From IMG/VR virus record IMGVR_UViG_3300042482_000702, positions 186,001 to 250,000 of that record: 64,000 nt of DNA, one strand, 5' to 3'. The position numbers were made by a program, and so were the translations under genes. The notes beneath the pieces were generated by a model. It did no database searches and was not told the DNA's origin. It saw only the letters and a program-made list of their open reading frames with translations. Positions within the stretch are counted from its first letter, which is position 1; the number at the start of each line of letters is the position of its first letter. This document shows, piece after piece, positions 14,638 through 43,117 of this stretch.

Positions 14638-15451
14638 ACCCAAAATAATCATAAAACCATTTATAATGATTCTTAATGTTGGTTGATAATTCATAACCCA
14701 ATATATCCAAATAATCATCCGGTAATTTTCTAAATTCTTTTCTCAATACATGGTCACCATATATACCGTGAACAACATCATTTTCGTTTGTCACCTGTTC
14801 GATATATTCAAAATTGTGTTCTTGATACATTGGTTGTCCAACATAGTCGTAAAATCGTTTTAATTCTCTTTCAGGGTTATCCATCAAATCCTCGTATCTA
14901 ATAAATAAAATTTTAGTATGAAGTCCTTGTTGGAAGATATCTTGTAGTCGGTCTAATGTCACACCAACCGGTGGACCACTAGCCCAAATATCTATTCGTT
15001 TGTTTACAGTTGTTCCAACCAATTCGTTTGGGTTCTGTATATGATTTTCTTTGTGGGGGTTTTTTCTGAAGTTTTTTTCCATTGAGGAATAGACACATCT
15101 AATGTCTCTAACCATACAAACAATCTTTGGGTCTTCTTTGAATAAACTCAATAGATTGTAATTAATACCCCACCCTCGACTCTTGTCTAACACATATGGT
15201 TTATCTGTTAATTCCTCAAAGAATCCTTGAATCCCTTTTCTACAAAAATTAATGAATGCTTTTTCCATTAATTTGGGGTCTTGTGCTCTAATTTCTTGAG
15301 AACCATTATAATGATTTTTAGCTCCCGATACCAACTCAATTAATCCTGAAGTTGGGGTTACGTAAAATTGGGGGTTTTGTCCGATTAAATTTTGAAATAG
15401 GGTTGACCCTGCTCTAGGTAGAGAAGAGTTAAAAAAGATTATCTTATCCAT
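14630..15451 (-). CDS. PAPS-dependent sulfotransferase
   Basis: 5'-PSB loop SLPRAGSTL, 3'-PB motif KIVCMVRD...VYSS, IRYEDL...P. Confidence 0.85.
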   Translation of the reverse strand: MDKIIFFNSSLPRAGSTLFQNLIGQNPQFYVTPTSGLIELVSGAKNHYNGSQEIRAQDPKLMEKAFINFCRKGIQGFFEELTDKPYVLDKSRGWGINYNLLSLFKEDPKIVCMVRDIRCVYSSMEKNFRKNPHKENHIQNPNELVGTTVNKRIDIWASGPPVGVTLDRLQDIFQQGLHTKILFIRYEDLMDNPERELKRFYDYVGQPMYQEHNFEYIEQVTNENDVVHGIYGDHVLRKEFRKLPDDYLDILGYELSTNIKNHYKWFYDYFGYV

Positions 15452-18224: not shown

Positions 18225-21200
18225 TTATGTTGTTTGTGTTATTATAATATCTACCGTCATATTTGCGTCAGGTGGAAATTGAGAGTAAAATGTTGCGACT
18301 CCTGAAGCAACACCTACATAAGGTAATACTTGTGCGTTATACGCTGTTAGATAACTTGCATTTTGTGGTGTGACAGATACATCACAATTTGCGGTAATAT
18401 TTACATTACTGAATGAGTATGTGTAATATCCTGACACTAATGTCCACGATGATGCGGTTAATGTTTGACCTGTAAGTTTAATTGGTGTTGAACCTCCACC
18501 ACCTGAACTTGTTCCACTAGTACCTGACATTCCTGATGTTCCCGCAATACCATTTTCTCCTGATGTCCCTGATGAACCACTAACCCCTATTCCACTTGTT
18601 CCACTAGAACCTGCGGCTCCTGATGTTCCTGAAGAACCGCTATTACCAGTACTACCAGATGTTGTTACTAATAAACCATTTGCTCCAACACAGATTGAAC
18701 ATCCCGATGAACCAGTGAAACTACAAACAGATAAGTCATTAACAAATGTTGTACACGCTCTATTCGCTGTTATATTACTACCTATGATGTTAGAATGAGG
18801 AAAGGAAGATGATATTGTGTTTAATTGACCACCAAGGATTGATGAATAAGAACTAGAAACAGAATTACAACAACCACCACCGACTGTTGACAAAGGGCTA
18901 AAAGTTTTATTACCTTTACCACCAGCAATTGTTGAACAATTTCCACAACTAGCGTTACCATAACCACCACCAATAAATGATGTTGTCCCCGATGCAATGT
19001 TACTTATACCACCAACAACAACAGACGCACATCCAAAAGCTGTGTTACCAATATAAGTCAAAGGGTCCCAAAATCCACCACCAACGAATGAATAGTAACC
19101 TAAAGCACAATTACCTTTACCACCACCAATTGTTGAGGAACGACCACAAGCCCTATTACTCCTACCACCCGCAATTGTTGAGTAGTAACCGTTGGCATGA
19201 TTAGCATCACCCCCTCCAACTGTTGATATATACTTAGCACAATTATTAGAACCACCAGCGATTGTTGCAGTTGAACACGTAGTATAATTACCCTGACCAC
19301 CACCAATGGTTGAGATACTACCGCTACAAATATTATTACTATAACCACCACCAATTGTTGTATAAGCACCTGAACCTGTCTTATTACGACAACCACCACC
19401 AATAGTTTGATTAAGATAAGAGGTAACATTATAGGCACCACCACCAATGGTTGAACAATGTCCCGTTGCAGAGTTTTTAAATCCACCACCAACTGTTGAG
19501 GTATTTCCTGAAGAAATATTAAAATGACCACCACCGATGGTTGTATGAACTCCACCGACAGTGTTACAACGACCTCCACCAATGGTTGTAAAACCAACAT
19601 AAGGAGTTGAGGTATTACAATAACCTCCTCCTATTGTATTACCACCAGTATTTAAACTAACCCCTCCATATACGTTTGTATTAATAGTATTTTTATTTCC
19701 ACCGTTAATAACATCACCTATTCTTGGAGATGTATTATTATAGTTTTGTGATGGAAATATTCTGTTACAACAACCACCACCGATAAATGATGTTGTTCCT
19801 GACGATACATTATTTTGACCTCCAACAACTGTCGAAAAATTACATGATGCAGTATTTCCACTACCCGCTAATGCGGCTGAAAAACACGATGATGCTGTAT
19901 TATTAACACCACATCTAATAGTCGAATTAACACCTGTTCCGGTAATGATTATACTATCACCACCTCCACCACCAGAAGCAACAGGAATTAATAAACCATT
20001 TGCTCCAACACAGATTGAACATCCAGATGACCCAGTAAAACTACAAACAGATAAGTCATTAACAAATGTTGTACAAGTTCTATTTGCGGTTATATTACTA
20101 CCTATGATGTTAGAATGAGGAAAGGAAGATGATATTGTGTTTAATTGACCACCAAGGATTGATGAAAAATTACCACAAACAACATTACGAAAACCACCAT
20201 TAATGGTATTACATCCATATTCAGGAAATATATTGTTACAATAACCACCATTAATGGTATTACCACCAACAATATTATATGCACCACTATTTGAGTGGAT
20301 AGTATTACAACCACCTCCTCCAATAATATTTGGTATAATACTATAAAGATTACCGTTAGTGGTAAAATTACAAATAGTGTTACAACATCCACCACCAATT
20401 GTTGAGTTATCAGCAATAGCTCTATTTAATACACCACCGCCAATTGTAATATTACATCCAACAACTGTTCCGGTACAAGATGTGTTTGTAAAAGTGAGTG
20501 TTTGTCCGGCAGTAAAATAAGTGTTTGTTGGGATTTTTGTAAGTCCCGATGAATAGTTTACACCATACGTACAAGATATAACCGCAACACAATTAACCCA
20601 TTTATTTGTTTGGTTGTAAACCATTAATGTTGTTGAGTAAGGGGTAAATTGACTAACAAGATTACCTGAAACATATATATATGCACCATTAACACAAACG
20701 GAGTTAAATCTTGGTGTGTTTGAAATAAAATTCATTACTCCACCACCAATAGTTGACACAGGACCTTTTGATATATTACCTTGACCACCACCAATAACTG
20801 AACAACCATTAAATATGATATTATCACCTCCTCCTCCAATTGTTGAGGTATTACCAGACGAGATATTACTAATACCTCCACCAACTGTTGAACAATTACC
20901 TGTTGCGCGGTTACTTATACCACCACCAATAAATGATGTTGTTCCTGATGCAACATTACCTAGTCCACCAACAACAGCAGACGCAAATCCGAAAGCTGTG
21001 TTACTAATATAAGTTGTACCCTCTCTACATCCACCACCAACGAATGAATAGTCACCTAAAGCACAGTTATACCACCCACCACCAATTGTTGAAGATTTCC
21101 CACATGCTTTATTACTTCTACCACCACCAATTGTTGAGTAGAAACCTTTGGCACAATTATTACCACCACCTCCAACTGTTGATATATATGTAGCGCAATT

Positions 21201-32105: not shown

Positions 32106-33323
32106 ATGAAAGAAAAAATTAATGTATTAGTTCTACCATCAGATACTTCAGGTGTTGGAAAATTTCGTTCGGTAGACCCTCATGTATTCTTACAAAACCA
32201 ATATCCTGATGATTTTCATGTGGATATAGATTATACCCCAAAGATAGATGATATTAATTATTGGAAAAAATATCAGATAATTCACGCTCATAGAACTATT
32301 GGTAATAACTACGAAGTGTCAGCACAAATAATTAAAGGATTAAAAGAATTAGGTATTATTGTCATTATTGATATCGATGATTATTGGTTACCAACAGTAG
32401 ACCATCCAATCCATAGTATTATCGTAAAACATAAAATTCACGAGAAAATTGTTGCAAACTTAAAAGAAGCCAGTTATGTTACAACGACAACTGATTTATT
32501 TGCAAACGAAATTCGTAAACTCAATAAAAATGTATTAGTTTTACCAAACGCTATAAATCCAAAAGAAGGTCAATTTAATCAACCAACACCACCGTCAGAA
32601 AAGATTAGAGTTGGATGGCTCGGAGGTAGTTCACACATTGAGGATTTAAATTTATTGGGGGATTTTGTTCAGAAAAATCAAGACATAAATGATAAATTAC
32701 AATATGTTATTTGTGGTTTTGATATTAGAGGTACCGTAACAGAACTTAACCCACAAACAGGTGAAGAAAGAAAAAGAGATATATTACCTCACGAAACTGT
32801 TTGGACTAAATATGAAGATATTTTCACTAACAAGTATAAAACCATAGATGAGAACTATAAAAAACATTTATTAGAGTTCAAAGAACGAGAATTCTTATCA
32901 ACAAGTGATTTGCCATATGTTAGAGTTTGGACAAAACCTGTTACAACTTATGCTATGAATTATTCAAAATTTGACATATCTTTGGCACCGATTAAAAATC
33001 ATATCTTCAATAGAATGAAATCTCAATTAAAAGTGATTGAGGCTGGGTTTTATAAGAAAGCGTTAATTGCGTCAGAAATTGGTCCTTACACGATTGATTT
33101 GAAACATTGTTTGAAAAATGGTAATTTCACAGATGGTAATGCAATTTTAATCCCTGAAAATAGAAATCATAGTGATTGGTCTAAATCAATTAAAAAGTTG
33201 GTTCAAAACCCTGAAATGATTACTGAATTGGGTGAACGATTATTTGAGACCGTTAAAGACAAATATGATTTAAAAAATGTTACAATTACAAGAGCAGAAT
33301 TTTACAAATCTTTAATTAAATAA
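32106..33323 (+). CDS. GT-B fold (GT4-like) glycosyltransferase
   Basis: SGVGKFRS..P, DIDDYW, LPNAI, VGWLGGSSH..DL, DISLAPI...FN.MKS.LK.IEAG. Confidence 0.8.
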   Translation: MKEKINVLVLPSDTSGVGKFRSVDPHVFLQNQYPDDFHVDIDYTPKIDDINYWKKYQIIHAHRTIGNNYEVSAQIIKGLKELGIIVIIDIDDYWLPTVDHPIHSIIVKHKIHEKIVANLKEASYVTTTTDLFANEIRKLNKNVLVLPNAINPKEGQFNQPTPPSEKIRVGWLGGSSHIEDLNLLGDFVQKNQDINDKLQYVICGFDIRGTVTELNPQTGEERKRDILPHETVWTKYEDIFTNKYKTIDENYKKHLLEFKEREFLSTSDLPYVRVWTKPVTTYAMNYSKFDISLAPIKNHIFNRMKSQLKVIEAGFYKKALIASEIGPYTIDLKHCLKNGNFTDGNAILIPENRNHSDWSKSIKKLVQNPEMITELGERLFETVKDKYDLKNVTITRAEFYKSLIK

Positions 33324-33327
33324 AAAA

Positions 33328-34029
33328 ATGATAAACATACCTTTAACCAAAATATTGTTTCTTGATATTGAGACAGTCGGTGGTTGCACAAACTATACAG
33401 AGTGTAAAGTTAATAATCCTAATGTTGCCAAACAATTTGAAAAGTATTTTGATTGGTTTCAAAAAAGATTTCCGGAAGATATTGGTCAGTCATTAGACTA
33501 TGTTTTTGAAAAACGAGCGGCTTTAGTTCCCGAGTTTTCAAAAATTGTTTGTGTTAGTGTAGCGTTTGTTATGGACAATGGGGATATTAAAAAACAATCA
33601 TTCTCCGGAGACGATGAAAAAAAATTACTAAAAGATTGTCAAACATTACTTAATCGTTGTGGTAAATTAGATTTTTATCTATGTGGACATAACTTAAAGA
33701 ATTTTGACATTCCGATGTTGGCAAAACGAATGATTATTAATGGTTTAAAACCATCATCAATTTTACCATCTTATAATACCAAACCTTGGGAGATTAAAGC
33801 GATTGACACCAAAGAAATTTGGCAATACGGAGCTTACACCGCAATTGGTTCCTTGGACTTAATGTGTTCTTGTATGGATGTTCCATCACCAAAGGAAGGT
33901 GATGTTACTGGAGATAAAGTTCACGACGCGTATTGGAATAAAAATATGTTACCAGAAATAACCGCTTATTGTGAACGAGATGTGTTGGTATTAATTGATG
34001 TAATAAAAAAATTAAAAGAGTTAGAATAA
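33328..34029 (+). CDS. DnaQ-like 3'-5' exonuclease (PolB-exonuclease-related family)
   Basis: LFLDIET (ExoI), GHNLKNFDIP (ExoII), YCERDV (ExoIII). Confidence 0.85.
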   Translation: MINIPLTKILFLDIETVGGCTNYTECKVNNPNVAKQFEKYFDWFQKRFPEDIGQSLDYVFEKRAALVPEFSKIVCVSVAFVMDNGDIKKQSFSGDDEKKLLKDCQTLLNRCGKLDFYLCGHNLKNFDIPMLAKRMIINGLKPSSILPSYNTKPWEIKAIDTKEIWQYGAYTAIGSLDLMCSCMDVPSPKEGDVTGDKVHDAYWNKNMLPEITAYCERDVLVLIDVIKKLKELE

Positions 34030-34625
34030 TGGAATATAATAATTTAGATTTTTTAGAGGAAAAGGCTAAAGAATTAAGACAAAGATTAGAGGGTGATTTC
34101 GAAGATTTAGATATGACCGAAATGATGAATGAATTGGGTGTTGATATTAAAGATTTAGAGGATAAAATGTTAAATCATAGAACTAAACTACCTTTACAAT
34201 TTAATAAATTACATCCCGACGCAACAACACCAAAATATAATTACGAAGGAGATTCAGGGTTTGATTTACATTCTATTGATGAGATAATCATACCCCCATT
34301 TGGAAGAGCATTAGTCCCTACTGGATTATCTTTTGATATTAAAGATGGGTATGAAATTCAAGTTAGAACCAAAAGTGGTTTAGCCATTAATCAGGGTCTT
34401 ATGATATTAAATTCTCCCGGAACAGTTGATTCGTCATACACTGGAGAAATAAAGGGGATTATTTTTAATACTAACCCTTTTGAATTTACAATACCTAAAG
34501 GTATGAAAATAGGTCAAGCTGTCTTATGTCCCGTTGTAAATGGGGGGTGGGTTGACTTGGTAGAAGTTAATAAAATAAACGAAAAAGATAGAGGTGAAAA
34601 TGGATTTGGAAGTACAGGGATATAA
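34029..34625 (+). CDS. dut: Trimeric dUTPase with N-terminal extension
   Basis: GDSGFDL, RTKSGLA, NSPGTVDSSYTGE, IGQAV, RGENGFGSTG (motifs I-V). Confidence 0.95.
   Translation: MEYNNLDFLEEKAKELRQRLEGDFEDLDMTEMMNELGVDIKDLEDKMLNHRTKLPLQFNKLHPDATTPKYNYEGDSGFDLHSIDEIIIPPFGRALVPTGLSFDIKDGYEIQVRTKSGLAINQGLMILNSPGTVDSSYTGEIKGIIFNTNPFEFTIPKGMKIGQAVLCPVVNGGWVDLVEVNKINEKDRGENGFGSTGI
34577..34607 (+). repeat. 31-bp exact direct repeat, copy 1
   Basis: aaacgaaaaagatagaggtgaaaatggattt. Confidence 0.95.
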
Positions 34626-35232
34626 CTCAATAGATTTAAAAGTGGTAATGAGACCTTATGAGTCAGAACATGAATTAAGATTGTTTTGTCAAGAATTAAA
34701 AAAAACATTAGGAGATTCTCCGACAATTGTTGAACTTGGTTCATATATGGGTGAAAGTAGTTTAATTTTTTCTCAAGAATTCCCTAATGGGAAAATTATA
34801 TGTATAGATTCGTGGGAAGGTGGGTTTGACGATTCCGATTCCGCTAGTCACGCCGATTATATTGATGTTGAAGAACAGTTTGATTTAAGATTATCATCTG
34901 TTAATAACATTACAAAATTAAAAGGATATTCGACAGATTTCACAATCGAATGTGATATGGTTTATATCGACGCTTGTCATAAATATGAGTGTGTTATGAA
35001 CGATATTAAACATTGGGGACCATTAACCACGAAAGTAATTTCCGGTCACGATTATAATACAGATGAATTTATTAGGATTCATCCACATATTGCAGGGGTT
35101 AAAGTTGCAATAAATGAATCTTTAGGGATTCCGGATAAAATATTTGGTGATGGGTCATGGTTTAAAATAATATTTAATAAAAACGAAAAAGATAGAGGTG
35201 AAAATGGATTTAGTTCAACAAAATTGTTTTAA
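34594..35232 (+). CDS. Class I SAM-dependent methyltransferase (Methyltransf_24-like); start probably ATG 34600 or 34648
   Basis: VELGSYMGES, CIDSW, DMVYIDACHKY, ISGHDY. Confidence 0.85.
   Translation: MKMDLEVQGYNSIDLKVVMRPYESEHELRLFCQELKKTLGDSPTIVELGSYMGESSLIFSQEFPNGKIICIDSWEGGFDDSDSASHADYIDVEEQFDLRLSSVNNITKLKGYSTDFTIECDMVYIDACHKYECVMNDIKHWGPLTTKVISGHDYNTDEFIRIHPHIAGVKVAINESLGIPDKIFGDGSWFKIIFNKNEKDRGENGFSSTKLF
35181..35211 (+). repeat. 31-bp exact direct repeat, copy 2
   Basis: aaacgaaaaagatagaggtgaaaatggattt. Confidence 0.95.
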
Positions 35233-36157
35233 TAAAAAAATATTAATAATTGGTGGTAGTGGTTATATTGGTAGTTTTTTGAGAAAAAAACTACCTTATG
35301 ATTTAAGTTCTGTCGATATCGAATGGTTTGATAATAATGAGTCAATATCGGTTGATTTTGGTACTTTATCGGAATCGTTTTTATCGGAACAAGATGTTAT
35401 TATTTTGTTGGCGGGACATTCAAGTGTTAAAATGTGTCAAGGGGATTATATGAACGCGTTTAATAATAATGTTGTTAATTTTTTAAAATTAACAAATAAA
35501 ATTAAATTAATTGAAAAACGAATTAAACTAATTTACGCTAGTAGTTCTAGTGTATATGGCATGACAGGGGATTTAATTGTTGATGAAAATTATAATAGTT
35601 TCATACCTTATAATAATTATGACATAACCAAACATATAATCGATGTTTATGCGGAATTTTCAGGAGTGGAATATTATGGGTTAAGATTTGGAACGGTTAA
35701 TGGATATTCCCCGATAATGAGGAGTGACGTGATGATAAACTCAATGACATCCTCAGCGTTAAATACTAAAAAAATTCAGTTATATGTTAAAGACACATTA
35801 AGACCTATTTTGGGAATTAATGATTTAACTTCAGCAATTATTAAAATTATTGAGGAGCCAAAAGATTTGAGAGGTCATTATAATTTAGCTTCGTTTAATA
35901 GTACTTCAGAAAAAATCGCGATGGGGGTTTCAAAAATTACAGGGGCCGATATTATTGAAATGGAATCCCCAAATAAAAACCCAACAAATAAACTTGAAAG
36001 TAAAAACTATAATTTTTCAATTAATTGTGATAAATTTATTGAAAATTTTGACTTTAAATTTGAAGAAACAATTGAAAGTATTACCAAAAGTATTGTTGAT
36101 AACTTTGAAAACATTAAATTAACTATAAGAGATAAAATAATTAACTATGAATTATAA
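35198..36157 (+). CDS. NAD-dependent nucleotide-sugar epimerase/dehydratase (extended SDR); start probably ATG 35204
   Basis: ILIIGGSGYIG, YASSSSVYG, YDITK (YxxxK), LRFGTVNG. Confidence 0.9.
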   Translation: MKMDLVQQNCFNKKILIIGGSGYIGSFLRKKLPYDLSSVDIEWFDNNESISVDFGTLSESFLSEQDVIILLAGHSSVKMCQGDYMNAFNNNVVNFLKLTNKIKLIEKRIKLIYASSSSVYGMTGDLIVDENYNSFIPYNNYDITKHIIDVYAEFSGVEYYGLRFGTVNGYSPIMRSDVMINSMTSSALNTKKIQLYVKDTLRPILGINDLTSAIIKIIEEPKDLRGHYNLASFNSTSEKIAMGVSKITGADIIEMESPNKNPTNKLESKNYNFSINCDKFIENFDFKFEETIESITKSIVDNFENIKLTIRDKIINYEL

Positions 36158-37346
36158 CAAAAAAAAAGAATGTATTTGTTGTGGTAGTAACGATTTAACT
36201 GAAATTTTAAATTTAGGTGAGCAACCATTGGCGAATTCGTACCATAATAATGACAATGAAATATTACCTAATTTCCCGTTAAATCTTAATTTATGTGGTA
36301 AATGTTATCATTTACAATTATCACATATTGTAAACCCGGATTTATTATTTAGAAATTATTTATATGTTAGCGGTACTTCAAATACGTTAAGAAAGTATTT
36401 TAATTGGTTTGTTGATTTTGTAAATGAGTATTGTGAATTAAAAACCGGGTCAGTATTAGATATTGCTTGTAATGATGGGACTCAATTAGATTATTTTAAA
36501 AATAAAGGTTGGGACACATATGGTATTGACCCGTCTAAAAATTTATATGATGTAAGTTCAAAAAATCATAATATTGTTTGTGATTATTTTGATAGTAAAA
36601 ATTTTGATAGAAAATTCGATGTGATTACGGCACAAAATGTTTTTGCTCATAATGAAAACGCTAAAGAATTTTTGGATAATTGTTATACATTAATGCACGA
36701 TGATTCTTTATTGTTTATCCAAACGTCGCAATCCGAAATGGTTAATAACAATGAATTCGATACAATTTACCACGAACATATTTCATTTTTTAATATTAAT
36801 TCATTTAATGAACTGACAAAACGAACTAATCTACATTTAATTGATGTTATTAAAACACCTGTACACGGTATTAGTTATTTATTTGTGTTAAGTAAAAAAG
36901 AAAAAAATAAATTTTTAATTGATAATTTAATTTCAGTTGAAGAAGAAAAAGGATTATTATCTTATGAGACATATATTAATTACAAAAAAAATGTCTCAGA
37001 AATAGTTAATGACTTTAAAAAGTCAATCCAAAAATATCGTGATAGAGGTTATAAAATTATTGGGTATGGTGCGGCAGCCAAAGGCATGACTTTTTTAAAT
37101 TTTGCTAATGAAAAGATGGATTTTATAATTGACGATAATGAATTAAAACAAGGGTTATTCACCCCTGGGACTAACACTGAAATTAAATCGATTAATTTTT
37201 TACATGACTATAACAATGATGATTATATAGTATTCGTTCCATTGGCGTGGAATTTTTTCACCGAAATTAAAGAAAAAATTAAAAAAGTGAGAAATAATGA
37301 GAATGATGTTTATATAAAATATTTTCCAAAATTTACTGATAAATGA
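36147..37346 (+). CDS. NDP-hexose C-methyltransferase (zinc-binding, TcaB9/EryBIII-like family)
   Basis: CICCGS...LGEQPLAN...C.KC.HLQL zinc site, DIACNDG, FDTIYHEH, GYGAAAKG, LAWNF..EI. Confidence 0.88.
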   Translation: MNYNKKKECICCGSNDLTEILNLGEQPLANSYHNNDNEILPNFPLNLNLCGKCYHLQLSHIVNPDLLFRNYLYVSGTSNTLRKYFNWFVDFVNEYCELKTGSVLDIACNDGTQLDYFKNKGWDTYGIDPSKNLYDVSSKNHNIVCDYFDSKNFDRKFDVITAQNVFAHNENAKEFLDNCYTLMHDDSLLFIQTSQSEMVNNNEFDTIYHEHISFFNINSFNELTKRTNLHLIDVIKTPVHGISYLFVLSKKEKNKFLIDNLISVEEEKGLLSYETYINYKKNVSEIVNDFKKSIQKYRDRGYKIIGYGAAAKGMTFLNFANEKMDFIIDDNELKQGLFTPGTNTEIKSINFLHDYNNDDYIVFVPLAWNFFTEIKEKIKKVRNNENDVYIKYFPKFTDK

Positions 37347-38077
37347 AAACAATTATATCACATTTTTACAATGAAGAGTATCTTCTCCCTTGGTGGCTTA
37401 AACATCACAAACAATTTTTTGACCACGGAATTATGATTGATTACCATTCTACGGATAATTCAGTTAATATTATTAAAGAAATTTGTCCGACTTGGGAGAT
37501 TGTTGAAAGTAAAAATAAAGAATTTGACGCCGCTGATGTAGATGTTGAAGTTATGGAGATTGAATCAAAATTAGATGGGTGGAGAATCGTTTTAAACACA
37601 ACGGAATTTTTAATTGGTGATTTTGAAAAGTTATCCCAAATTAATAAACCTGAAGATATTATAATATCTTCTTATGTTATGGTTGATAATGTTAATGAGG
37701 AGTTTACTTATCCTAACATAAATAAATCACTCATATCTCAACGTTTAAATGGGTTTAAAGATGTTGGATTCAGGAGGGGAAGAAAATTAAGTAATTTTTA
37801 TTCTACTTATCCTTTAGGTCGACATTACAACATTATTAATACTGACAATTTTATAATTTTATGGTACGGATTTTCACCAATGAACGATTCAATAATTAAA
37901 AGAAAATTACAGATTCAAAATAAAATGCCAGAAAGTGATAAACAAAATGGCCGGGGGTACCAACATATCACAAATGAGAATAAAATTAAGAATGAGTTTA
38001 AAGATTTACAAAATAAGTCGTATGACTTAACTATTAATATTAAAAAATATGATAACAATAATATACTCAACACATAA
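37343..38077 (+). CDS. GT2-like glycosyltransferase
   Basis: HFYNEEYLLPWWL.HH...FDH..MID..STD.S. Confidence 0.75.
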   Translation: MKTIISHFYNEEYLLPWWLKHHKQFFDHGIMIDYHSTDNSVNIIKEICPTWEIVESKNKEFDAADVDVEVMEIESKLDGWRIVLNTTEFLIGDFEKLSQINKPEDIIISSYVMVDNVNEEFTYPNINKSLISQRLNGFKDVGFRRGRKLSNFYSTYPLGRHYNIINTDNFIILWYGFSPMNDSIIKRKLQIQNKMPESDKQNGRGYQHITNENKIKNEFKDLQNKSYDLTINIKKYDNNNILNT

Positions 38078-39572
38078 AAATGAAAATTATAATAACAAAT
38101 TTAGACAACATTTGTTACAAAGTTCAGGTTTAAAAGATATTCAAATATTAGAATATATTAACCACAATCAATTTAGTTTATCTGAATTATATAATAAAGG
38201 GATTTCAGAATCAATTTATGATATAATAGTTTGTTGTCACAACGATATTAAACTTGAAAATGGGTGGGGTAAAAAATTACTTAATGATTTTGATGAAAAC
38301 CCTGATTATGGTATTATAGGTAAAGCTGGTTCTTGTTATTTCCCTGAATCAGGGATTTACTGGGAAAAAATGAATCAAACAATGGTTGGACAGGTTTATC
38401 ACCACCCTGAAGGTCAGAAAAAATGGTTAAGTAATTATTCATCAAAATTACCATATTTAATACCTGTTGTAACTATTGATGGGTTATTCATATCATTTAA
38501 TAAGTTAAAGATTAACCATCAATTTGATGAGACAATTGGTAAATTTCATTTTTATGACCATTTATTTTGCGTACCAAATTATTTAGATGGTGTTAAAATT
38601 GGTGTTACCTCATCTTTTGAAATCACTCACGAATCCGTTGGTAAACCTAATATGGAATTTTATAATTCAAAAGATATGTTCATTAAAAAATGGGGTAATA
38701 AATTACCTTTGGATTTAAAACCTTTGGAGGTTCATATACCGATTATAAAAGAAAAACAATTAAAAAATATTGGTAGAGTTGCGGTAATTATACCAACAAA
38801 AGGTAAGACAGACTTATTATTTTCCTGTGTAAACTCTTTTATAAAAAATTGTAATCCCCAATTATTTGATGTGTTTATCGCCGACACTGGGTCGTCAGAT
38901 TTTGAAAAAAAAGAAATTAGAGAATTTATATTAGAAAATCAAACCAATATTAAGATAAACTTAATTGAGTACGATTATTATAATTTTGGAAAAATTAATA
39001 ATGATGTGGTTAAAAATCGTATAACCGATGAATATGAATTTTTATTATTTTGTAATAACGATATTAAAATCCTTAACAATGTTATTTACGGGATGTTAAA
39101 AAATTTTAAAGAAAATTCAAAAATTGGGACTGTTGGGTGTAGATTACATTACGAAAATAACACAATACAACATAATGGTATTGTTGCCAATTTTGATTCT
39201 GTTGGTAATTTTGGAGTAGGACATATAGAATTAAATAAATACTATTCTAAAACATATAAAGTTAATGATGTTATCGGTTCAACGGGTGGACTACTGATGA
39301 TTAAAAAAATTATGTTTGAAAAATTAGGTTATTTTAACGAAAATTATATTTCTTGTTTTGAGGATGTTGAATTAAATTTAAAATCTATTTTATTAGGTTA
39401 TCGGAATATTTGCGACACTAGTTTAGTGGCGTATCATTTTGAAAGTCAAACTCGAAATGATGACCCTGAAAATTTAAAAAAATTACAACTTGATTTTAAG
39501 AATAATTTATTTCCATTTGTTTCTAATAATATAGAGAGACTACACAAACATATTTTAATGATTAAAACATAG
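38049..39572 (+). CDS. Two-domain GT2 glycosyltransferase
   Basis: YNKGI...CCHNDI...IDGLF...FHFYD (domain 1); VIIPT...ADTGS...FCNNDI...VG.RL.Y....QH.G...EDVEL (domain 2). Confidence 0.85.
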   Translation: MITIIYSTHKNENYNNKFRQHLLQSSGLKDIQILEYINHNQFSLSELYNKGISESIYDIIVCCHNDIKLENGWGKKLLNDFDENPDYGIIGKAGSCYFPESGIYWEKMNQTMVGQVYHHPEGQKKWLSNYSSKLPYLIPVVTIDGLFISFNKLKINHQFDETIGKFHFYDHLFCVPNYLDGVKIGVTSSFEITHESVGKPNMEFYNSKDMFIKKWGNKLPLDLKPLEVHIPIIKEKQLKNIGRVAVIIPTKGKTDLLFSCVNSFIKNCNPQLFDVFIADTGSSDFEKKEIREFILENQTNIKINLIEYDYYNFGKINNDVVKNRITDEYEFLLFCNNDIKILNNVIYGMLKNFKENSKIGTVGCRLHYENNTIQHNGIVANFDSVGNFGVGHIELNKYYSKTYKVNDVIGSTGGLLMIKKIMFEKLGYFNENYISCFEDVELNLKSILLGYRNICDTSLVAYHFESQTRNDDPENLKKLQLDFKNNLFPFVSNNIERLHKHILMIKT

Positions 39573-39620
39573 ACATTTAAATTAAAAGAAGTATTCTTAT
39601 AAAATAAAAACAATTATAAA

Positions 39621-40385
39621 ATGGCTGAACAACGAAAAAAGAAACCAACAACAACTACTTCTACCCCTGAACCAACAGGTAAACCGATAAATAAAAAAGA
39701 TTTAATTGGTCAAATCATTAAGAGAAAAACTAAAGAAAAGTTTTTAACTCTAAATCAAAAAAAGTATTACGACACTTTAATTGATAGTGAAATAACAATT
39801 TGTTCCGGACCGGCAGGTGTTGGTAAAAGTTATATAACAATGAAGGCAGCTATTGATTTACTTTCAGATTCAAAAACCCCTTATGAAAAAATAATCATTG
39901 TTAGACCAGCTGTCGAAGCCGAGGAAAAATTAGGTTCATTACCAGGAAATGTTGAGGAAAAACTTGACCCGTATATTTTTCCATCTTATTACTTATTAAA
40001 TAAAATTATAGGTAAAGAATCTAGAGAAAAATTAAAAGAGATTGAAGTTATTGAAGTATTTGCTTTGGCTTTTATGCGAGGTATGAACATTGATAATTCT
40101 ATTTTAATTTTTGAAGAAGGTCAAAATGCTTCTCCAAGTCAAATGAAACTACTTTTAACAAGGATTGGATATAATAGTAAGTTTTTTATTTCTGGTGATG
40201 TAGAACAGTCAGACAAATATAAAAATAAGACTCATAGTGGTTTATGGGATGCTATTGAAAAATTTAGAGATGATGATTACGTATCAACATTTGAATTTAA
40301 AGATAAGAGCGATATTGTGAGAAATCCTTTAATTAGTAAAATATTACGTAAATACGATAACGAATCAGATGAGAATAGCAATTGA
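39621..40385 (+). CDS. phoH: PhoH-family ATPase
   Basis: GPAGVGKS, IIVRPAVE..EKLGSLPG, AFMRG, EEGQN...QMK.LLTRIG, GD..QSD, DIVRNPLI. Confidence 0.95.
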   Translation: MAEQRKKKPTTTTSTPEPTGKPINKKDLIGQIIKRKTKEKFLTLNQKKYYDTLIDSEITICSGPAGVGKSYITMKAAIDLLSDSKTPYEKIIIVRPAVEAEEKLGSLPGNVEEKLDPYIFPSYYLLNKIIGKESREKLKEIEVIEVFALAFMRGMNIDNSILIFEEGQNASPSQMKLLLTRIGYNSKFFISGDVEQSDKYKNKTHSGLWDAIEKFRDDDYVSTFEFKDKSDIVRNPLISKILRKYDNESDENSN

Positions 40386-40968
40386 AATTAATGGTGTTTT
40401 AAGAAACACTATTAATAAAATAGAACAAACATATCAAAAATATTATATTGATAAAACTGATGGTATTGAAGATGAGATATTCAGTTATGGTATGTCTTTA
40501 CCCGTAACTTCACTAACATTACAAGACCATTTCAAATTTCAAGATGATGATGAATTGTTTTCATTTTTATATGAAGAATTTCCAATGGAAATATTTGGTC
40601 ACTCACAATCGTCGGAGTATTCAACATTCACTGATTTAAACGAATTATATGTAAATTTAAGAGATAATCACGAGTTATTAATTGTGTCTGATGAAATTGG
40701 TAGGTCTAAACCAGCTTCGTTATTTTTCTTATCAAAATTTGGTTGTTTATTAGAAAAAGTAAAATTTTATAGTAATTCTACAATAAATTCTATGTGGGAG
40801 GAAATTGATGTTTTACTTACATCAAATCCTACCTTATTATTAGAACATCCTTCAGATAAAATATTAATAAAATTTGAGACGGAGTACAATAAAGAGATTA
40901 ACACAATCCATTCTATTACATCAATTAAAGAATTGGAAGATAAATTAAAAAAAATAATAGAATGTTAA
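40369..40968 (+). CDS. HAD-fold 5'-nucleotidase-like protein with altered catalytic motif
   Basis: MRIAIEINGVLRN in place of IxIDxDGVL; C-terminal YN...I..I.EL. Confidence 0.55.
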   Translation: MRIAIEINGVLRNTINKIEQTYQKYYIDKTDGIEDEIFSYGMSLPVTSLTLQDHFKFQDDDELFSFLYEEFPMEIFGHSQSSEYSTFTDLNELYVNLRDNHELLIVSDEIGRSKPASLFFLSKFGCLLEKVKFYSNSTINSMWEEIDVLLTSNPTLLLEHPSDKILIKFETEYNKEINTIHSITSIKELEDKLKKIIEC

Positions 40969-41237
40969 AAGTATTAGGTGAAAATTATTATTTGGATTTA
41001 GATAAAATTGATTCTTATGTCCAAATAGAGGAAAAAGTGTCAACATCCGGAGAAACCGAGGGTACCGCGATTAGTATTATAAAATACGAAACAATTAAAT
41101 TAATGTTAGAAATCATTATGGATGAAACCGAAGATATTGATGATAAATTAGGAATTAAAGGTGTTAGCCAATTATCAATACCTTTTAAACTAGCGTTCAA
41201 CACTTTACTATATAAAAAATTATTAAATAAATTATAA
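40962..41237 (+). CDS. Hypothetical protein
   Basis: 91-aa ORF in operon. Confidence 0.65.
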   Translation: MLKVLGENYYLDLDKIDSYVQIEEKVSTSGETEGTAISIIKYETIKLMLEIIMDETEDIDDKLGIKGVSQLSIPFKLAFNTLLYKKLLNKL

Positions 41238-41241
41238 CACA

Positions 41242-42303
41242 ATGACACAAGAACAAATTTCAAAATTAGAGAAATCTATTCAGAACATGAAAGATAAGAA
41301 ATCTAGAATTTATCTTTTAGTTCAAGACACTAAAGGTAACGCAAAAGCCTCATTATCCTATATCTATAATTTAGGAATGGCATTATTAAATGAAGGATAT
41401 AATCCAATTATGTTACACGAAAAATCTGACTACACAGGAGTTCAAAGTTGGTTAGGTCAGGAGTACATGGATTTATTGTCTCATAAACCAATTGAAGGTG
41501 AAAATTTAGAGGTTTCACCTGAAGATTTTATTATTTTACCTGAACTTTATGGGTTTGTAATGAGTCAAATTTCTAAATTACCTTGTGGTAAAATAGTTTT
41601 ATGTCAAGCATATGACCATATATTAGAAACTTTACAACCAGGCCAAACTTGGTCTCAATTAGGGTTTTTCAAATGTATAACAACATCAGAGATTCAAAAA
41701 GAATATTTAGAAAATATAATGAGAAACATCTCATTTGATATATTAAAACCATTCATTTCTGATGATTTTGTACCAAACCCATTACCGGCTAAACCAATTA
41801 TAGCAATACACGCTAGAGACCAAAGAGAGTCAACTAATATTATAAAATCTTTTTATATTAAATTCCCACAATATAGATGGGTTACATTTAGAGATATGAG
41901 AGGATTATCTGAGACTGAATTTGCTAAAGCTCTAAAAGAGTGTTTTCTTTCTGTTTGGGTTGATGAAACAAGTTCATACGGTACCTTCCCATTAGAATCT
42001 ATGAAATGTAATGTTCCTGTTTTAGGATTAGCACCTAATTTAGTTCCGGAATGGATGAATGAAGATAACGGTATTTGGATTAATAATAAAATACAAATCG
42101 TAGATTATATTTCTGACTTTTTACAAAATTGGTTAGAGGATAGCATTAACGAAAATTTAGAAGGTGAAATGTTAAAAACTGTTGGGACATTGTCAACTAA
42201 AGAAACTTTCAACTCCGAAGTAATAAACCTTTTTGAAAGATACTTGTCTGTTAGATTAGAATCGTTTGAAGAGCAATTATCTAAACTAGAAACAATAGAA
42301 TAA
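41242..42303 (+). CDS. GT-B fold glycosyltransferase-like protein
   Basis: DFIILPE, WVD..SSYGTFPLESMKC.VPV.G (GT-B E-x7-E-like region). Confidence 0.65.
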   Translation: MTQEQISKLEKSIQNMKDKKSRIYLLVQDTKGNAKASLSYIYNLGMALLNEGYNPIMLHEKSDYTGVQSWLGQEYMDLLSHKPIEGENLEVSPEDFIILPELYGFVMSQISKLPCGKIVLCQAYDHILETLQPGQTWSQLGFFKCITTSEIQKEYLENIMRNISFDILKPFISDDFVPNPLPAKPIIAIHARDQRESTNIIKSFYIKFPQYRWVTFRDMRGLSETEFAKALKECFLSVWVDETSSYGTFPLESMKCNVPVLGLAPNLVPEWMNEDNGIWINNKIQIVDYISDFLQNWLEDSINENLEGEMLKTVGTLSTKETFNSEVINLFERYLSVRLESFEEQLSKLETIE

Positions 42304-42304
42304 T

Positions 42305-43117
42305 ATGGAAGAAACTAAAACATTTGACGTATCCGTAATATTACCAATAAAATCAGGTAAAACATTAGGATTTACAGAGTATTTTGAAAAATGTGTAAAA
42401 TCATTACAAAATCAAAAAGTGGAAATAAACGAACTAATAATTGTTCATACTAACGAAAGTTATTTGGTTGATTATTTAAACGAGTTTGACTTCGGAAGTT
42501 TAACTGTTAAGAAATACGAATGGACTAAAGACCCTAACTACGCTGACCAAATAAATTACGGGGTTAGAAATTCAAATTCAGAATGGGTTTCATTATTTGA
42601 ATTTGATGATGAATATTCAAGTATTTGGTTTAAAAATGTTGACTTATATAGTGGTGTGTATCCTGATGTAAACGCGTTTTTACCAATTGTTGTTGATACA
42701 GATGAATCAGGTAAATTTGCCGGATTCACTAATGAAGCGACTTTTGCTGCCAATTTTACTGAAGAAATGGGTGTATTAACTAATGAAACATTACTTGACT
42801 ATCAGAATTTTCAAACGTCAGGTATGGTTATTAAAAAATCGTCATTCCTTGATTTTGGATTAATTAAATCATCATTTAAATTAACCTTTGGTTACGAATT
42901 CTTTTTAAGAATGACACATAACTCGGTAAAAATTATATCAATTCCTAAAATAGGTTATAAGCATACAAATTTAAGACAAGGGTCCATTTTTTGGAATTAT
43001 AAAAATGGTGAAAATGTTTTAACTGACGATGAAGTTAAGTTTTGGATTGAATCGGCAAAAAAAGAATATTTGTTTATTAATGACAGAAACATAAAATACG
43101 AACCTCAAGAAGTTTAA
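42305..43117 (+). CDS. GT2 (GT-A) glycosyltransferase
   Basis: VSVILPI, QINYGV, WVSLFEFDDEY, EFFLRM. Confidence 0.75.
   Translation: MEETKTFDVSVILPIKSGKTLGFTEYFEKCVKSLQNQKVEINELIIVHTNESYLVDYLNEFDFGSLTVKKYEWTKDPNYADQINYGVRNSNSEWVSLFEFDDEYSSIWFKNVDLYSGVYPDVNAFLPIVVDTDESGKFAGFTNEATFAANFTEEMGVLTNETLLDYQNFQTSGMVIKKSSFLDFGLIKSSFKLTFGYEFFLRMTHNSVKIISIPKIGYKHTNLRQGSIFWNYKNGENVLTDDEVKFWIESAKKEYLFINDRNIKYEPQEV

What the first reader, a model, noticed from the sequence alone, without database searches (positions are those of the whole stretch)
34594..43117. Second glycan locus: branched/methylated sugar synthesis plus four more glycosyltransferase genes
An O-methyltransferase-like enzyme, an SDR epimerase/dehydratase, an NDP-hexose C-methyltransferase (the family that makes branched sugars in antibiotics and O-antigens) and GT2 enzymes overlap in one operon. 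Further GTs lie at 32106, 41242 and 42305. The window has eight GT genes with about twelve GT-like domains, far more than simple DNA glucosylation needs. Inference: the phage builds its own unusual oligosaccharide, as some giant viruses do for their fibrils. A DNA or host-surface target is not excluded, given the neighbouring dut, exonuclease and HAD genes.
Basis: partly seen in the sequence, partly recalled or inferred. Interest (0 to 1): 0.66.

Follow-up and report, generated by a model that had tools for sequence, protein, structure and literature searches.

The report
Swappable sugar-gene slot in lake phage
A 322-kb T4-like phage common in lakes has a hot-swappable gene slot that here holds enzymes for a rare methyl-branched sugar, and neighbouring genes suggest the phage sugar-coats its own serine-rich fibres, which would explain the puzzling "LPS genes" of aquatic phages.

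Summary

The region is not one unit.
- In 40 related IMG/VR loci the dUTPase-to-PhoH interval is a hypervariable glycan slot of 2.3-9.4 kb, holding 86 protein clusters.
- GT41242 and GT42305 are core genes.
- SDR + C-MT + GT2_4 is a recombined cassette. It is absent from all 80 relatives, and a 37-nt relic of the dUTPase tail marks the junction.

The genome has no sugar nucleotidyltransferase, no 4,6-dehydratase and no flippase-like membrane protein, so it tailors host NDP-sugars rather than making them.

I found no route to hydroxylated DNA pyrimidines, which makes a DNA target unlikely.

A protein target is favoured. The first locus encodes a TibC/Aah-class protein O-glycosyltransferase, scoring above its curated cut-off. 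In 18 of 21 fully flanked relatives it lies near giant proline-free Gly-Ser/Thr collagen-like proteins. The closest solved relative of GT41242 belongs to a family whose characterised members extend protein-linked glucose.

Verdict: a new variant of a known kind (glycan islands of aquatic T4-like phages). The acceptor is inferred, not shown.

The parts
32106..33323 (+). GT-B (GT4-like) glycosyltransferase; semi-core gene upstream of exo and dut
   Evidence: phrog_7162, E 2e-45. AF2 model has pTM 0.71, and Foldseek best hits are PglA, MshA and BshA. Found at 64-99% identity in relatives wherever the locus reaches that far.
34029..34625 (+). dUTPase; conserved left border of the variable slot
   Evidence: TIGR00576, 138.8 bits. 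Conserved in 40 related loci. Its 3' end is copy 1 of the 37-nt repeat.
34571..34607 (+). 37-nt direct repeat, copy 1. It encodes dUTPase motif V and holds the GAGGTG ribosome-binding site and the ATG of the methyltransferase.
   Evidence: Two copies in the window against 0 expected by chance.
34600..35232 (+). Class-I SAM methyltransferase (PF13578), probably a sugar O-methyltransferase; accessory gene
   Evidence: Present in only 4 of 80 relatives (L012, L014, L075, L086). Its last ~17 codons are a relic of the dUTPase tail.
35175..35211 (+). 37-nt direct repeat, copy 2 (35 of 37 identical). This is the recombination scar at the left edge of the SDR cassette.
   Evidence: An independent lake contig (X9 record 27) spans both copies.
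35204..36157 (+). Extended SDR (GGSGYIGS, SSSSVYG, YDITK): an NDP-sugar C4 oxidoreductase or epimerase type, not a 4,6-dehydratase
   Evidence: It is always the gene directly upstream of the C-MT in L006, L007, L092, L093 and the P0003 contig.
36147..37346 (+). NDP-4-keto-hexose 3-C-methyltransferase (TylC3 / TcaB9 / KijD1 family)
   Evidence: At least 120 metagenome clusters at 62-100% identity. Best bacterial species representative is only 51% identical.
37343..38077 (+). GT-A glycosyltransferase (PF13704); candidate transferase for the branched sugar
   Evidence: It arrives and leaves together with SDR + C-MT. The closest relatives carry a different ~250-aa GT at this position.
38049..39572 (+). 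Double GT-A enzyme (PF13712 + PF00535); semi-core anchor of the slot
   Evidence: A member of its family is present in 39 of 40 loci.
39621..40385 (+). PhoH-like ATPase; conserved right border of the slot
   Evidence: PF02562, E 2e-59. 80 related loci at 80-97% identity.
41242..42303 (+). Core GT-B glycosyltransferase of the Agt/AmGGT type
   Evidence: Profile against PDB 8xsg, E 1.2e-17. 59-97% identical in every relative that reaches it. No match in 50,697 GenBank phage records.
42305..43117 (+). Core GT-A (GT2) glycosyltransferase with an invariant D-D-E motif
   Evidence: 61-96% identical in relatives.
8403..11141 (+). 912-aa multidomain GT (GT4 plus a GT25-like part); conserved partner of the TibC fusion (first locus)
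   Evidence: Paired with the next gene in 73 of 80 loci.
11153..13276 (+). GT4 domain fused to a TibC/Aah-class protein O-glycosyltransferase domain (residues 385-705)
   Evidence: TIGR04414, 280.6 bits against a cut-off of 200. PDB TibC 4rap, E 4e-48, with the Cys cluster kept. 80 IMG/VR loci at 35-95% identity.
14191..15451 (-). APS kinase plus sulfotransferase: PAPS supply and sulfation
   Evidence: Present in about 15 of 80 related loci.
18225..23795 (-). 1856-aa collagen-like protein with (Gly-Thr/Ser-Ser)n repeats; candidate glycan acceptor
   Evidence: Proteins of the same kind lie next to the TibC fusion in relatives.

Best explanation
The region is the variable slot of a glycan-tailoring system in a widespread, uncultivated freshwater T4-like jumbo phage.

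Shown:
- Between the conserved dUTPase and PhoH genes, every relative carries a different set of sugar-modifying and glycosyltransferase genes.
- Two further GTs (41242, 42305) are core genes. GT32106 and the double GT-A enzyme are semi-core.
- In this genome the slot holds a recombined cassette of SDR + 3-C-methyltransferase + GT2_4, placed behind a PF13578 methyltransferase.

Inferred mechanism:
1. The host supplies an activated sugar, most simply dTDP- or GDP-4-keto-6-deoxyhexose.
2. The C-methyltransferase adds a methyl branch at C3 using SAM.
3. The SDR reduces C4. Alternatively it first oxidises and then re-reduces C4 of a plain NDP-hexose.
4. GT2_4 transfers the branched sugar onto a glycan started by the conserved GTs.
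5. The PF13578 enzyme O-methylates it.

Inferred acceptor: phage proteins glycosylated in the cytoplasm before assembly. The leading candidates are the giant proline-free Gly-Ser/Thr collagen-like fibres. Priming would be by the conserved GT912 / GT4-TibC pair of the first locus.

My confidence by layer: island and cassette about 0.85, branched-sugar chemistry about 0.7, protein (fibre) acceptor about 0.45.
For: Island:
- 80 related loci were fetched through PhoH.
- The block downstream of PhoH, including GT41242 and GT42305, is present in all loci that reach it. SDR, C-MT and GT2_4 are in none.
- The dut-to-PhoH interval is 2,278-9,410 nt and holds 285 ORFs in 86 clusters.
- Those clusters are dominated by GT2, GT8, GT11, GT25, GT92, GT6, GDP-mannose dehydratase, epimerases, DegT, hexapeptide acyltransferases and FkbM / PF13578 methyltransferases.

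Cassette:
- A 37-nt repeat flanks the methyltransferase gene.
- At about 35163-35175 homology switches from the methyltransferase to the dut tail.
- A relative has exo-dut-SDR-C-MT directly.
- In another population, 843 other bases replace 35190-38043.
- Independent lake contigs span the junction and the cassette.
- The stretch is held by more than 20 lake, freshwater or estuary studies.

Chemistry:
- TylC3 match at E 2.7e-59, with the Zn-Cys and Y-H-E-H motifs invariant.
- The SDR has GxxGxxG and YxxxK but lacks the dehydratase motif.
- The SDR and C-MT genes are adjacent in all five other contexts examined.
- No nucleotidyltransferase is present.

Acceptor:
- TIGR04414 scores above its cut-off, and the TibC structure matches.
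- Ser/Thr-rich collagen-like ORFs lie within 10 kb in 18 of 21 fully flanked distinct loci, and within 1.5 kb in 12. The control, 80 PhoH-region loci, has none.
- The window's own collagen-like proteins are 29% Ser+Thr.
- GT41242 matches the Agt/AmGGT family, whose ApAgt member extends protein-linked glucose (PMC12159676).
- No GT has a membrane helix, and no ORF in the genome has 8 or more.
Against: - No experiment exists. The sugar, its nucleotide carrier and the acceptor are all inferred.
- The link to protein glycosylation comes from the first locus and from a core GT, not from the slot genes themselves. The two loci could serve different targets.
- Characterised TibC/Aah enzymes act on autotransporter beta-helices, not on collagen-like repeats.
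- AmGGT, the solved relative of GT41242, prefers free oligosaccharides.
- Peripheral GTs that work on lipid-linked intermediates also lack membrane helices, and the phage could use the host's flippase.
- No T4-type late promoter motif (TATAAATA) lies on the + strand between 29369 and 47990, although neighbouring structural genes have one.
- Many of the 80 loci are near-duplicates, and contig ends limit the counts.
Confidence: 0.5

Rival explanations
1. Host-envelope remodelling. The phage enzymes alter the O-antigen, capsule or another surface glycan of the infected cell, for example to block superinfection or adsorption of progeny. They would use the host's lipid carrier, flippase and ligase. 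This is the classic reading of the 'LPS genes' of cyanomyophages and pelagimyophages.
For: - The same kind of GT-rich hypervariable islands in aquatic T4-like phages has been read this way (PMC7029224; PMC12801897).
- The slot's families (GT8, GT25, GT11, DegT, GDP-mannose dehydratase) are typical of O-antigen loci.
- Strain-level turnover could track host O-antigen diversity.
- There is no late-promoter motif in the operon.
- 3-C-methyl sugars are known in LPS, for example virenose of Coxiella (PMC3539893).
Against: - The genome has no priming transferase, flippase or polymerase-like polytopic protein.
- A lytic jumbo phage has little time to rebuild an envelope.
- The one GT domain that reaches an equivalog-level assignment is a protein O-glycosyltransferase, and it is linked to fibre-like genes.
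- The phage C-MT clade is at most 51% identical to any bacterial species representative, so it is not a recent host pick-up.
Confidence: 0.25
2. DNA hypermodification. The GTs build oligosaccharides on hydroxylated pyrimidines of the phage DNA, and the slot varies under an arms race with restriction systems.
For: - Phage GTs related to LPS and teichoic-acid enzymes put mono- to trisaccharides on 5hmC (bioRxiv 10.1101/2023.12.21.572611).
- Poly-arabinosylated 5-hydroxycytosine occurs in T4-like RB69 (PMC13326640).
- The slot lies among nucleotide-metabolism genes (dut, exonuclease, PhoH).
- GT32106 has the same general fold as T4 alpha-glucosyltransferase (rank 47).
Against: - The only ThyA-family gene scores as a canonical thymidylate synthase: TIGR03284, 202 bits for its first half against a cut-off of 108.
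- No C5 DNA methyltransferase is present.
- No TET/JBP hit was found, but that search's control was silent, so it is uninformative.
- dut and PhoH are conserved borders of the slot in all relatives whatever its content.
- A TibC-class enzyme and Gly-Ser/Thr fibres are not explained by this reading.
Confidence: 0.08
3. Another target. The GTs might glycosylate a host protein such as a receptor or adhesin, or a small molecule. Alternatively the cassette is a recently acquired passenger with no selected role.
For: - TibC/Aah enzymes naturally modify bacterial adhesins.
- The cassette is a recent recombinant.
Against: - All ORFs are intact, tightly overlapped and recur in several independent lake samples with few differences.
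- The SDR + C-MT pair is kept across phages that share only 38-82% SDR identity.
Confidence: 0.07

Closest known systems
Glycan ('LPS' / cell-wall synthesis) gene islands and host-recognition clusters of aquatic T4-like myophages: P-SSM2, S-SCSM1, S-SCSM2R and pelagimyophages
   Same: T4-like structural core (gp23, gp20, prohead protease). Many GTs and NDP-sugar epimerases sit in non-syntenic islands between conserved modules, next to fibre genes. The function is unproven.
   Different: A precisely bounded slot (dut to PhoH) with 86 gene clusters. It contains a 3-C-methyltransferase cassette, which is found in only 9 of 50,697 GenBank phage records. A TibC-class protein GT is linked to Gly-Ser/Thr collagen-like proteins. 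The lineage lives in freshwater and has genomes of about 320 kb.
TylC3 / TcaB9 / KijD1 NDP-hexose 3-C-methyltransferases and the virenose pathway of Coxiella LPS
   Same: Three-domain architecture, Zn-Cys cluster and Y-H-E-H motif. The enzyme needs a 4-keto sugar and is followed by C4 reduction (PMC3539893).
   Different: Here it is encoded by a phage, without a nucleotidyltransferase, a 4,6-dehydratase or a 3,5-epimerase. It is paired with one SDR only. Identity to TylC3 is low (alignment).
Bacterial autotransporter heptosyltransferases (TibC, Aah)
   Same: Score above the equivalog cut-off and conserved Cys cluster. A cytoplasmic enzyme that O-glycosylates serines of repetitive proteins.
   Different: Fused to an N-terminal GT4 domain. 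No autotransporter is nearby; the neighbours are collagen-like Gly-Ser/Thr proteins. The donor sugar is unknown.
Virus- or spore-surface glycosylated fibrils: Mimivirus fibrils, chlorovirus capsid glycans, Bacillus BclA collagen-like glycoprotein, mycobacteriophage virion glycosylation (Freeman et al. 2023, as cited)
   Same: Virus-encoded multi-GT and methyltransferase machinery. Methylated or unusual sugars. A Gly-X-Thr type collagen repeat as acceptor (BclA). This comparison rests on my own knowledge of those systems.
   Different: No glycan has been measured here. The host is a bacterium and the virus is a T4-like phage. The glycan genes turn over between strains.
NGT / alpha-1,6-glucosyltransferase (Agt) cytoplasmic protein glycosylation of Actinobacillus
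   Same: A profile of core GT41242 matches the Agt-family structure AmGGT at E 1.2e-17 (PMC12159676).
   Different: No GT41-type NGT is present in the genome. AmGGT itself prefers oligosaccharide acceptors.

Membership tests
NDP-hexose 3-C-methyltransferase (TylC3 / TcaB9) | N-terminal four-Cys zinc domain (PF08421) | tested here: met
   PF08421, E 4.7e-16 at residues 9-68. C9, C12, C50 and C53 are invariant in 12 homologues.
NDP-hexose 3-C-methyltransferase (TylC3 / TcaB9) | SAM-binding Rossmann domain plus the C-terminal PF08484 domain | tested here: met
   PF13489, E 6.6e-19, and PF08484, E 1.1e-26. Aligned to 4rv9 over residues 8-376.
NDP-hexose 3-C-methyltransferase (TylC3 / TcaB9) | Active-site Tyr-His-Glu-His stretch | tested here: met
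   Y208, H209, E210 and H211 are invariant and aligned to the same residues of TylC3. That these residues are catalytic is from my own knowledge of the TcaB9 mutant studies.
NDP-hexose 3-C-methyltransferase (TylC3 / TcaB9) | C3 methylation of an NDP-4-keto sugar | not testable with these tools
   Needs an enzyme assay.
NDP-sugar 4,6-dehydratase (RmlB / Gmd) | Thr-Asp-Glu active-site motif before VYG | tested here: not met
   The SDR reads SSSSVYG where the 6bi4 dehydratase reads STDEVYG. GxxGxxG and YxxxK are present, so it is an intact extended SDR of another subtype.
Autotransporter O-heptosyltransferase (TibC / Aah, TIGR04414) | Score above the curated equivalog cut-off, and the Cys cluster | tested here: met
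   280.6 bits against 200 and 282 bits in the genome scan. The C-x-G-C-W, W-C-P and E-C motifs align to TibC 4rap.
Autotransporter O-heptosyltransferase (TibC / Aah, TIGR04414) | Acceptor is an autotransporter beta-helix; donor is ADP-heptose | tested here: inconclusive
   No autotransporter is nearby; the neighbours are Gly-Ser/Thr collagen-like proteins. No RfaE-type cytidylyltransferase-like domain is in the genome. The donor is unknown.
T4-type DNA glucosylation / glycan hypermodification | An enzyme that makes hydroxymethyl- or hydroxy-pyrimidine (ThyA homologue, or MT + TET) | tested here: not met
   The ThyA gene matches the thymidylate synthase equivalog above its cut-off. No PF00145. 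The TET search is uninformative because its control was silent.
Wzx/Wzy- or ABC-type O-antigen / capsule pathway encoded by the phage | Priming phosphoglycosyltransferase, flippase or polymerase (polytopic membrane proteins) | tested here: not met
   Of 323 ORFs of 80 aa or more, none has 8 or more hydrophobic segments; the maximum is 7, in a 201-aa ORF. No GT has a membrane segment. Use of host machinery is not excluded.
Hypervariable glycan islands of aquatic T4-like myophages | GT-rich non-syntenic region between conserved modules of a T4-like genome | tested here: met
   gp23, gp20 and the prohead protease are present. Conserved borders with variable content are shown. Compare PMC7029224.
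Phage virion glycosylation (mycobacteriophage type) | Glycans attached to virion proteins | not testable with these tools
   Needs mass spectrometry of virions. Only gene-neighbourhood evidence is available here.

The most novel reading that the evidence does not exclude
Freshwater, and probably other aquatic, T4-like jumbo phages run their own cytoplasmic protein O-glycosylation system. A conserved GT4-TibC fusion primes giant proline-free (Gly-Ser/Thr-Ser/Thr)n collagen-like fibrils. A hot-swappable dut-PhoH cassette slot then decorates them with strain-specific methylated, C-branched and sulfated glycans. This would be a 'virion serotype' locus, a phage counterpart of Mimivirus fibrils or the Bacillus BclA nap. 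It would also give the long-unexplained 'LPS genes' of cyanophages and pelagiphages a function.
Probability: 0.35. Interest if true: 0.8.

Novelty: new variant of a known kind. Interest (0 to 1): 0.62.

Why it matters
GT-rich islands in marine and freshwater T4-like phages have been catalogued for about twenty years without a demonstrated function. This locus offers three handles for testing.

1. A sharply bounded cassette slot with natural allelic variants in near-identical genomes.
2. A two-gene module (SDR + 3-C-methyltransferase) that can be assayed in vitro and would be the first branched-sugar pathway assigned to a phage.
3. A protein-type O-glycosyltransferase physically linked to giant Ser/Thr collagen-like proteins, which names a concrete acceptor.

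If virion fibres carry strain-variable glycans, that bears on phage adsorption, on grazing and aggregation of virus particles in lakes, and on how phage host range is read from genomes.

Tried and rejected
- Megablast of the locus against GenBank phages found nothing.
- The search for related loci with the single C-MT protein in IMG/VR gave no confirmed relative. PhoH and the TibC fusion worked as anchors instead.
- The TATAAATA late-promoter motif is not enriched in the window: 23 found against 18 expected. The sigma-70 and terminator scans were near background. Timing of expression is therefore undecided.
- The TET/JBP family search is uninformative because its control genomes were silent.
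- No GT41 NGT and no cytidylyltransferase-like domain are present.
- The AF2 model of the double GT-A enzyme was too poor to search (pLDDT 49).
- The model of GT32106 was moderate (pLDDT 66) and gave only generic GT4 hits. T4 alpha-glucosyltransferase appeared at rank 47, which does not discriminate.
- PDB sequence searches gave nothing useful for GT2_4 or for the PF13578 enzyme.
- The best PDB hit of the SDR (6vo6) is labelled only 'putative sugar-nucleotide epimerase/dehydratase'. I recall it as a heptose C4 dehydrogenase but could not confirm that in the library, so it stays a lead.
- Rfam found no group I intron in the split thyA region.
- A moraphage affiliation (PMC12619734) was considered and dropped, because this phage has a T4-type gp23, gp20 and protease.
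- The large representative-protein search and complex prediction were not used. Families were already assigned, and no binding claim is made.

Full report
**Setting**

The window is bases 186001-250000 of a 322,477-bp IMG/VR virus record judged complete by CheckV. Its G+C content is 31.5%. It encodes a T4-type major capsid protein, portal and prohead protease. The capsid is closest to those of Microcystis phage Mel-JY01, Flavobacterium 'immuto' phages and an uncultured huge phage, at 41-46% identity. The stretch 34594-43117 is held, largely intact, by lake-water, freshwater and estuary metagenomes of more than 20 studies. This is therefore a recurrent freshwater phage, and its host is unknown.

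**Observation**

- 34594-35232: PF13578 methyltransferase.
- 35198-36157: extended SDR.
- 36147-37346: a three-domain C-methyltransferase. It aligns to TylC3 (4rv9) at E 2.7e-59 and to TcaB9 and KijD1 at about 1e-34. The zinc cysteines and the Y-H-E-H stretch are invariant among homologues.
- 37343-38077: GT2_4.
- 38049-39572: a double GT-A protein.
- 42305-43117: GT2.
- 41242-42303: only sub-threshold in Pfam, but a profile of 15 homologues matches the GT-B glucosyltransferase AmGGT (8xsg) at E 1.2e-17.
- 32106-33323: a PHROG glycosyltransferase whose model has a GT4-like GT-B fold.

The genes from dut to the double GT overlap by 4-35 nt. The two GTG starts are probably artefacts of the ORF rule. 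Each is followed by GAGGTG and an ATG, at 34600 and 35204. No HAD family could be confirmed for 40369-40968.

**The region is composite**

Using PhoH as anchor I fetched 80 related IMG/VR loci, 80-97% identical in PhoH, from contigs up to 318 kb.
- Everything downstream of PhoH, including GT41242 (59-97%) and GT42305 (61-96%), is present and syntenic in every locus that reaches that far. These two GTs are core genes of the lineage.
- SDR, C-MT and GT2_4 occur in none of the 80, not even in the four relatives whose flanks are 90-99% identical.
- The PF13578 gene occurs in four.
- In the 40 loci that hold both dut and PhoH, the interval between them ranges from 2,278 to 9,410 nt. In the window it is about 5.0 kb.
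- That interval holds 285 ORFs falling into 86 clusters at 35% identity.
- The one near-constant member is the double GT-A family, present in 39 of 40 loci.

A Pfam scan of the 86 representatives found GT2, GT2_4, GT8, GT11, GT25, GT92 and GT6. It also found GDP-mannose 4,6-dehydratase, epimerases, DegT aminotransferases, hexapeptide acyltransferases, FkbM and PF13578 methyltransferases, and UDP-GlcNAc 2-epimerase. The closest relatives carry a minimal '~190-aa methyltransferase + ~250-aa GT + double GT' arrangement, with different GT families in each. The dut-PhoH interval is thus a hypervariable glycan-gene slot with conserved borders. It resembles a bacterial O-antigen locus and the islands described in pelagimyophages and cyanomyophages.

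**The cassette is a recombinant**

A 37-nt direct repeat (35 of 37 identical, spaced 604 nt apart) flanks the PF13578 gene. By chance none would be expected.
- Copy 1 is the end of dut, encoding motif V (Arg-Gly-Glu-Asn-Gly-Phe).
- Copy 2 forms the last codons of the methyltransferase ORF and carries the ribosome-binding site and ATG of the SDR.
- Aligned with the 92-96% identical methyltransferase genes of L012 and L014, the window loses their stop codon. At about 35163-35175 it switches to homology with the dut tail.
- The arrangement this predicts, with dut directly followed by SDR and C-MT, exists on a contig whose C-MT is 84% identical.

Laying Logan contigs on 33800-39700 showed the following.
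- Independent lake samples span the junction (X9 record 27) and the cassette (X2 record 7) with few differences.
- A related population (X24 record 11, about 94% identical) has 843 other bases in place of 35190-38043.
- Further contigs leave the window's sequence exactly at the dut stop and at the start of the 38049 gene.

The slot is therefore being exchanged in present-day populations. SDR + C-MT + GT2_4 moves as one unit, which is why I assign GT2_4 as the transferase of the branched sugar (inference).

**Chemistry**

The genome has no PF00483 and no PF01467 nucleotidyltransferase, although all 14 control genomes ring for both. It has a single extended SDR. That SDR has GGSGYIGS and YDITK, but it reads SSSSVYG where dehydratases read STDEVYG. 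It is therefore not a 4,6-dehydratase.

The SDR gene sits immediately upstream of the C-MT gene in every other context examined. This holds although SDR identity falls to 38% in the most distant case.

The family's established mechanism needs a 4-keto sugar. The simplest reading has three steps:
1. The host supplies an NDP-4-keto-6-deoxyhexose.
2. The C-MT methylates C3.
3. The SDR reduces C4.

A two-enzyme oxidise-methylate-reduce relay on a plain NDP-hexose is the alternative. Both give a 3-C-methyl-branched sugar of the evalose, virenose or mycarose kind (compare PMC3539893).

The PF13578 enzyme's look-alikes are viral clusters, some of which co-hit TylF and RMNT_CmcI sugar O-methyltransferases. 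O-methylation of the glycan is thus a reasonable inference, but it is unproven.

The C-MT belongs to a clade resident in phages. At least 120 metagenome clusters share 62-100% identity with it, and the long contigs examined are phage-like. The best of 185,579 bacterial and archaeal species representatives reaches only 51%. Only 9 of 50,697 GenBank phage records have any homologue.

**Acceptor**

Three targets were weighed.

*DNA.* The only ThyA-family gene is split by about 1 kb. Its first half matches the thymidylate synthase equivalog at 202 bits against a cut-off of 108. There is no C5 DNA methyltransferase. The TET search was uninformative. Glycan-modified DNA is real in other phages, but its prerequisite was not found here. 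The dut and PhoH genes are slot borders whatever the content.

*Host envelope.* This is the standard proposal in the literature, and the gene families fit it. However, the genome encodes no polytopic membrane protein of the flippase, polymerase or priming type, and no GT has a membrane helix.

*Phage proteins.* Four observations favour this target.
- In the first glycan locus, residues 385-705 of the 707-aa protein at 11153-13276 match TIGR04414. This model covers the Aah/TibC autotransporter O-heptosyltransferases. The score is 280.6 bits against a curated cut-off of 200. The same region matches the TibC structure at E 4e-48 with the cysteine cluster kept. This family glycosylates serines of proteins in the cytoplasm.
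- The fusion, together with the 912-aa GT before it, is conserved in 73 of 80 further IMG/VR loci at 35-95% identity. The fibre-like genes around it are not conserved.
- What recurs beside the fusion is a type of protein: giant collagen-like ORFs whose X and Y positions are 60-97% Ser/Thr and essentially free of Pro. One example has 3,117 aa with 2,556 aa of such repeats. Such ORFs are present in 33 of 56 distinct loci and in 18 of 21 loci with both flanks of 8 kb or more. In 12 loci they lie within 1.5 kb. The control, 80 PhoH-region loci, has none.
- The window has two such proteins, 18225-23795 and 60242-62308, each 29% Ser+Thr. An APS kinase and a sulfotransferase lie beside the first locus.

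With the Agt-family affinity of core GT41242 (PMC12159676), this makes cytoplasmic glycosylation of fibre proteins the best-supported target. It remains an inference from gene neighbourhood. The link between the second locus and that acceptor is indirect.

**Comparison and novelty**

As a kind, this is the GT-rich hypervariable island of aquatic T4-like myophages, which is known but functionally unresolved. Four things are new here:
- the exact slot and its scale of turnover;
- a branched-sugar (3-C-methyl) cassette with a visible recombination scar;
- the finding that two GTs are core genes without any GenBank phage homologue;
- a protein-type O-glycosyltransferase tied to Ser/Thr collagen-like proteins.

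A full-text search found no paper joining collagen-like phage fibres with O-glycosylation.

**Limits**

- There are no experimental data.
- Host, donor nucleotide, sugar stereochemistry and acceptor are unknown.
- Many related loci are near-duplicates or are cut by contig ends.
- Records very near this genome are withheld from the collection searches.
- Logan contigs show presence only.
- Expression timing is undecided.

Noticed in passing
window 34571-34607 and 35175-35211: A 37-nt direct repeat. The 3' end of dUTPase (motif V) is duplicated at the end of the methyltransferase ORF. Each copy carries a GAGGTG ribosome-binding site and an ATG. It marks where the SDR cassette was recombined in.
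   Followed up: yes
window 11153-13276 (+), with 8403-11141 (+): A GT4 domain fused to a TibC/Aah-class protein O-glycosyltransferase, scoring above the equivalog cut-off. It is paired with a 912-aa multi-GT in 73 of 80 related phage loci. Among cultured phages only Microcystis phage Mel-JY01 has it, where it is annotated 'methyltransferase FkbM'.
   Followed up: yes
window 18225-23795 (-) and 60242-62308 (-); also L180:12506-21859 (-): Collagen-like proteins made of Gly-Thr/Ser-Ser triplets with no proline. Relatives have versions up to 3,117 aa with 2,556 aa of such repeats, next to the TibC-fusion gene.
   Followed up: partly
window 14191-14718 (-) and 14630-15451 (-): An APS kinase overlapping a sulfotransferase. 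The phage can make PAPS from APS and sulfate something, presumably the glycan. The pair is present in about 15 of 80 related loci.
   Followed up: partly
window 52282-54138 (-): The major capsid protein is 618 aa. It matches the gp23 model in two stretches, and only about 56% of it aligns to other phage capsids. It probably carries a large insertion or extension domain.
   Followed up: no
genome C1:5332-7607 (-), outside the window (L008, L009): The thymidylate synthase gene is split into two pieces about 1 kb apart, with a 231-aa ORF between them. This resembles the intron plus homing endonuclease of T4 td, but Rfam found no group I intron at the gathering threshold.
   Followed up: partly
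window 43117-43866 (+): A core 249-aa protein with weak matches to sigma-70 region 2 and to T4 gp55 (7d7c_F, E 0.95). It is probably the late sigma factor and lies right after the two core GT genes.
   Followed up: partly
window 29349, 25432/25494, 47995, 49498, 56751: The T4 late-promoter motif TATAAATA sits directly upstream of the DUF285 giant protein, the 192-aa ORF, the genes at 48013 and 49513, and the prohead protease. None lies on the + strand between 29369 and 47990. Overall the motif is not enriched.
   Followed up: partly
window 16040-18220 (-), 25560-29318 (-), 2699-5866 (-): BspA-type LRR, DUF285 and LamG/concanavalin-like giant proteins surround the first glycan locus. They are not conserved in relatives, as expected for host-recognition fibres.
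   Followed up: partly
run X24, laid on window 33990-38120: A library labelled as a marine metatranscriptome holds a ~94% identical variant, with dut + methyltransferase joined through 843 other bases to the double GT gene. The lineage is therefore not strictly limnic. As these are contigs, transcription is not shown.
   Followed up: no
genome C1:284897-285502 (-), outside the window: This is the only strongly hydrophobic ORF of the genome, 201 aa with 7 predicted membrane segments. It is unidentified and too small for a flippase.
   Followed up: no
window 40369-40968 (+): A core 199-aa ORF with no family hit. Its N-terminus reads like HAD motif I with the two aspartates replaced (Glu-Ile-Asn-Gly-Val).
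   Followed up: no
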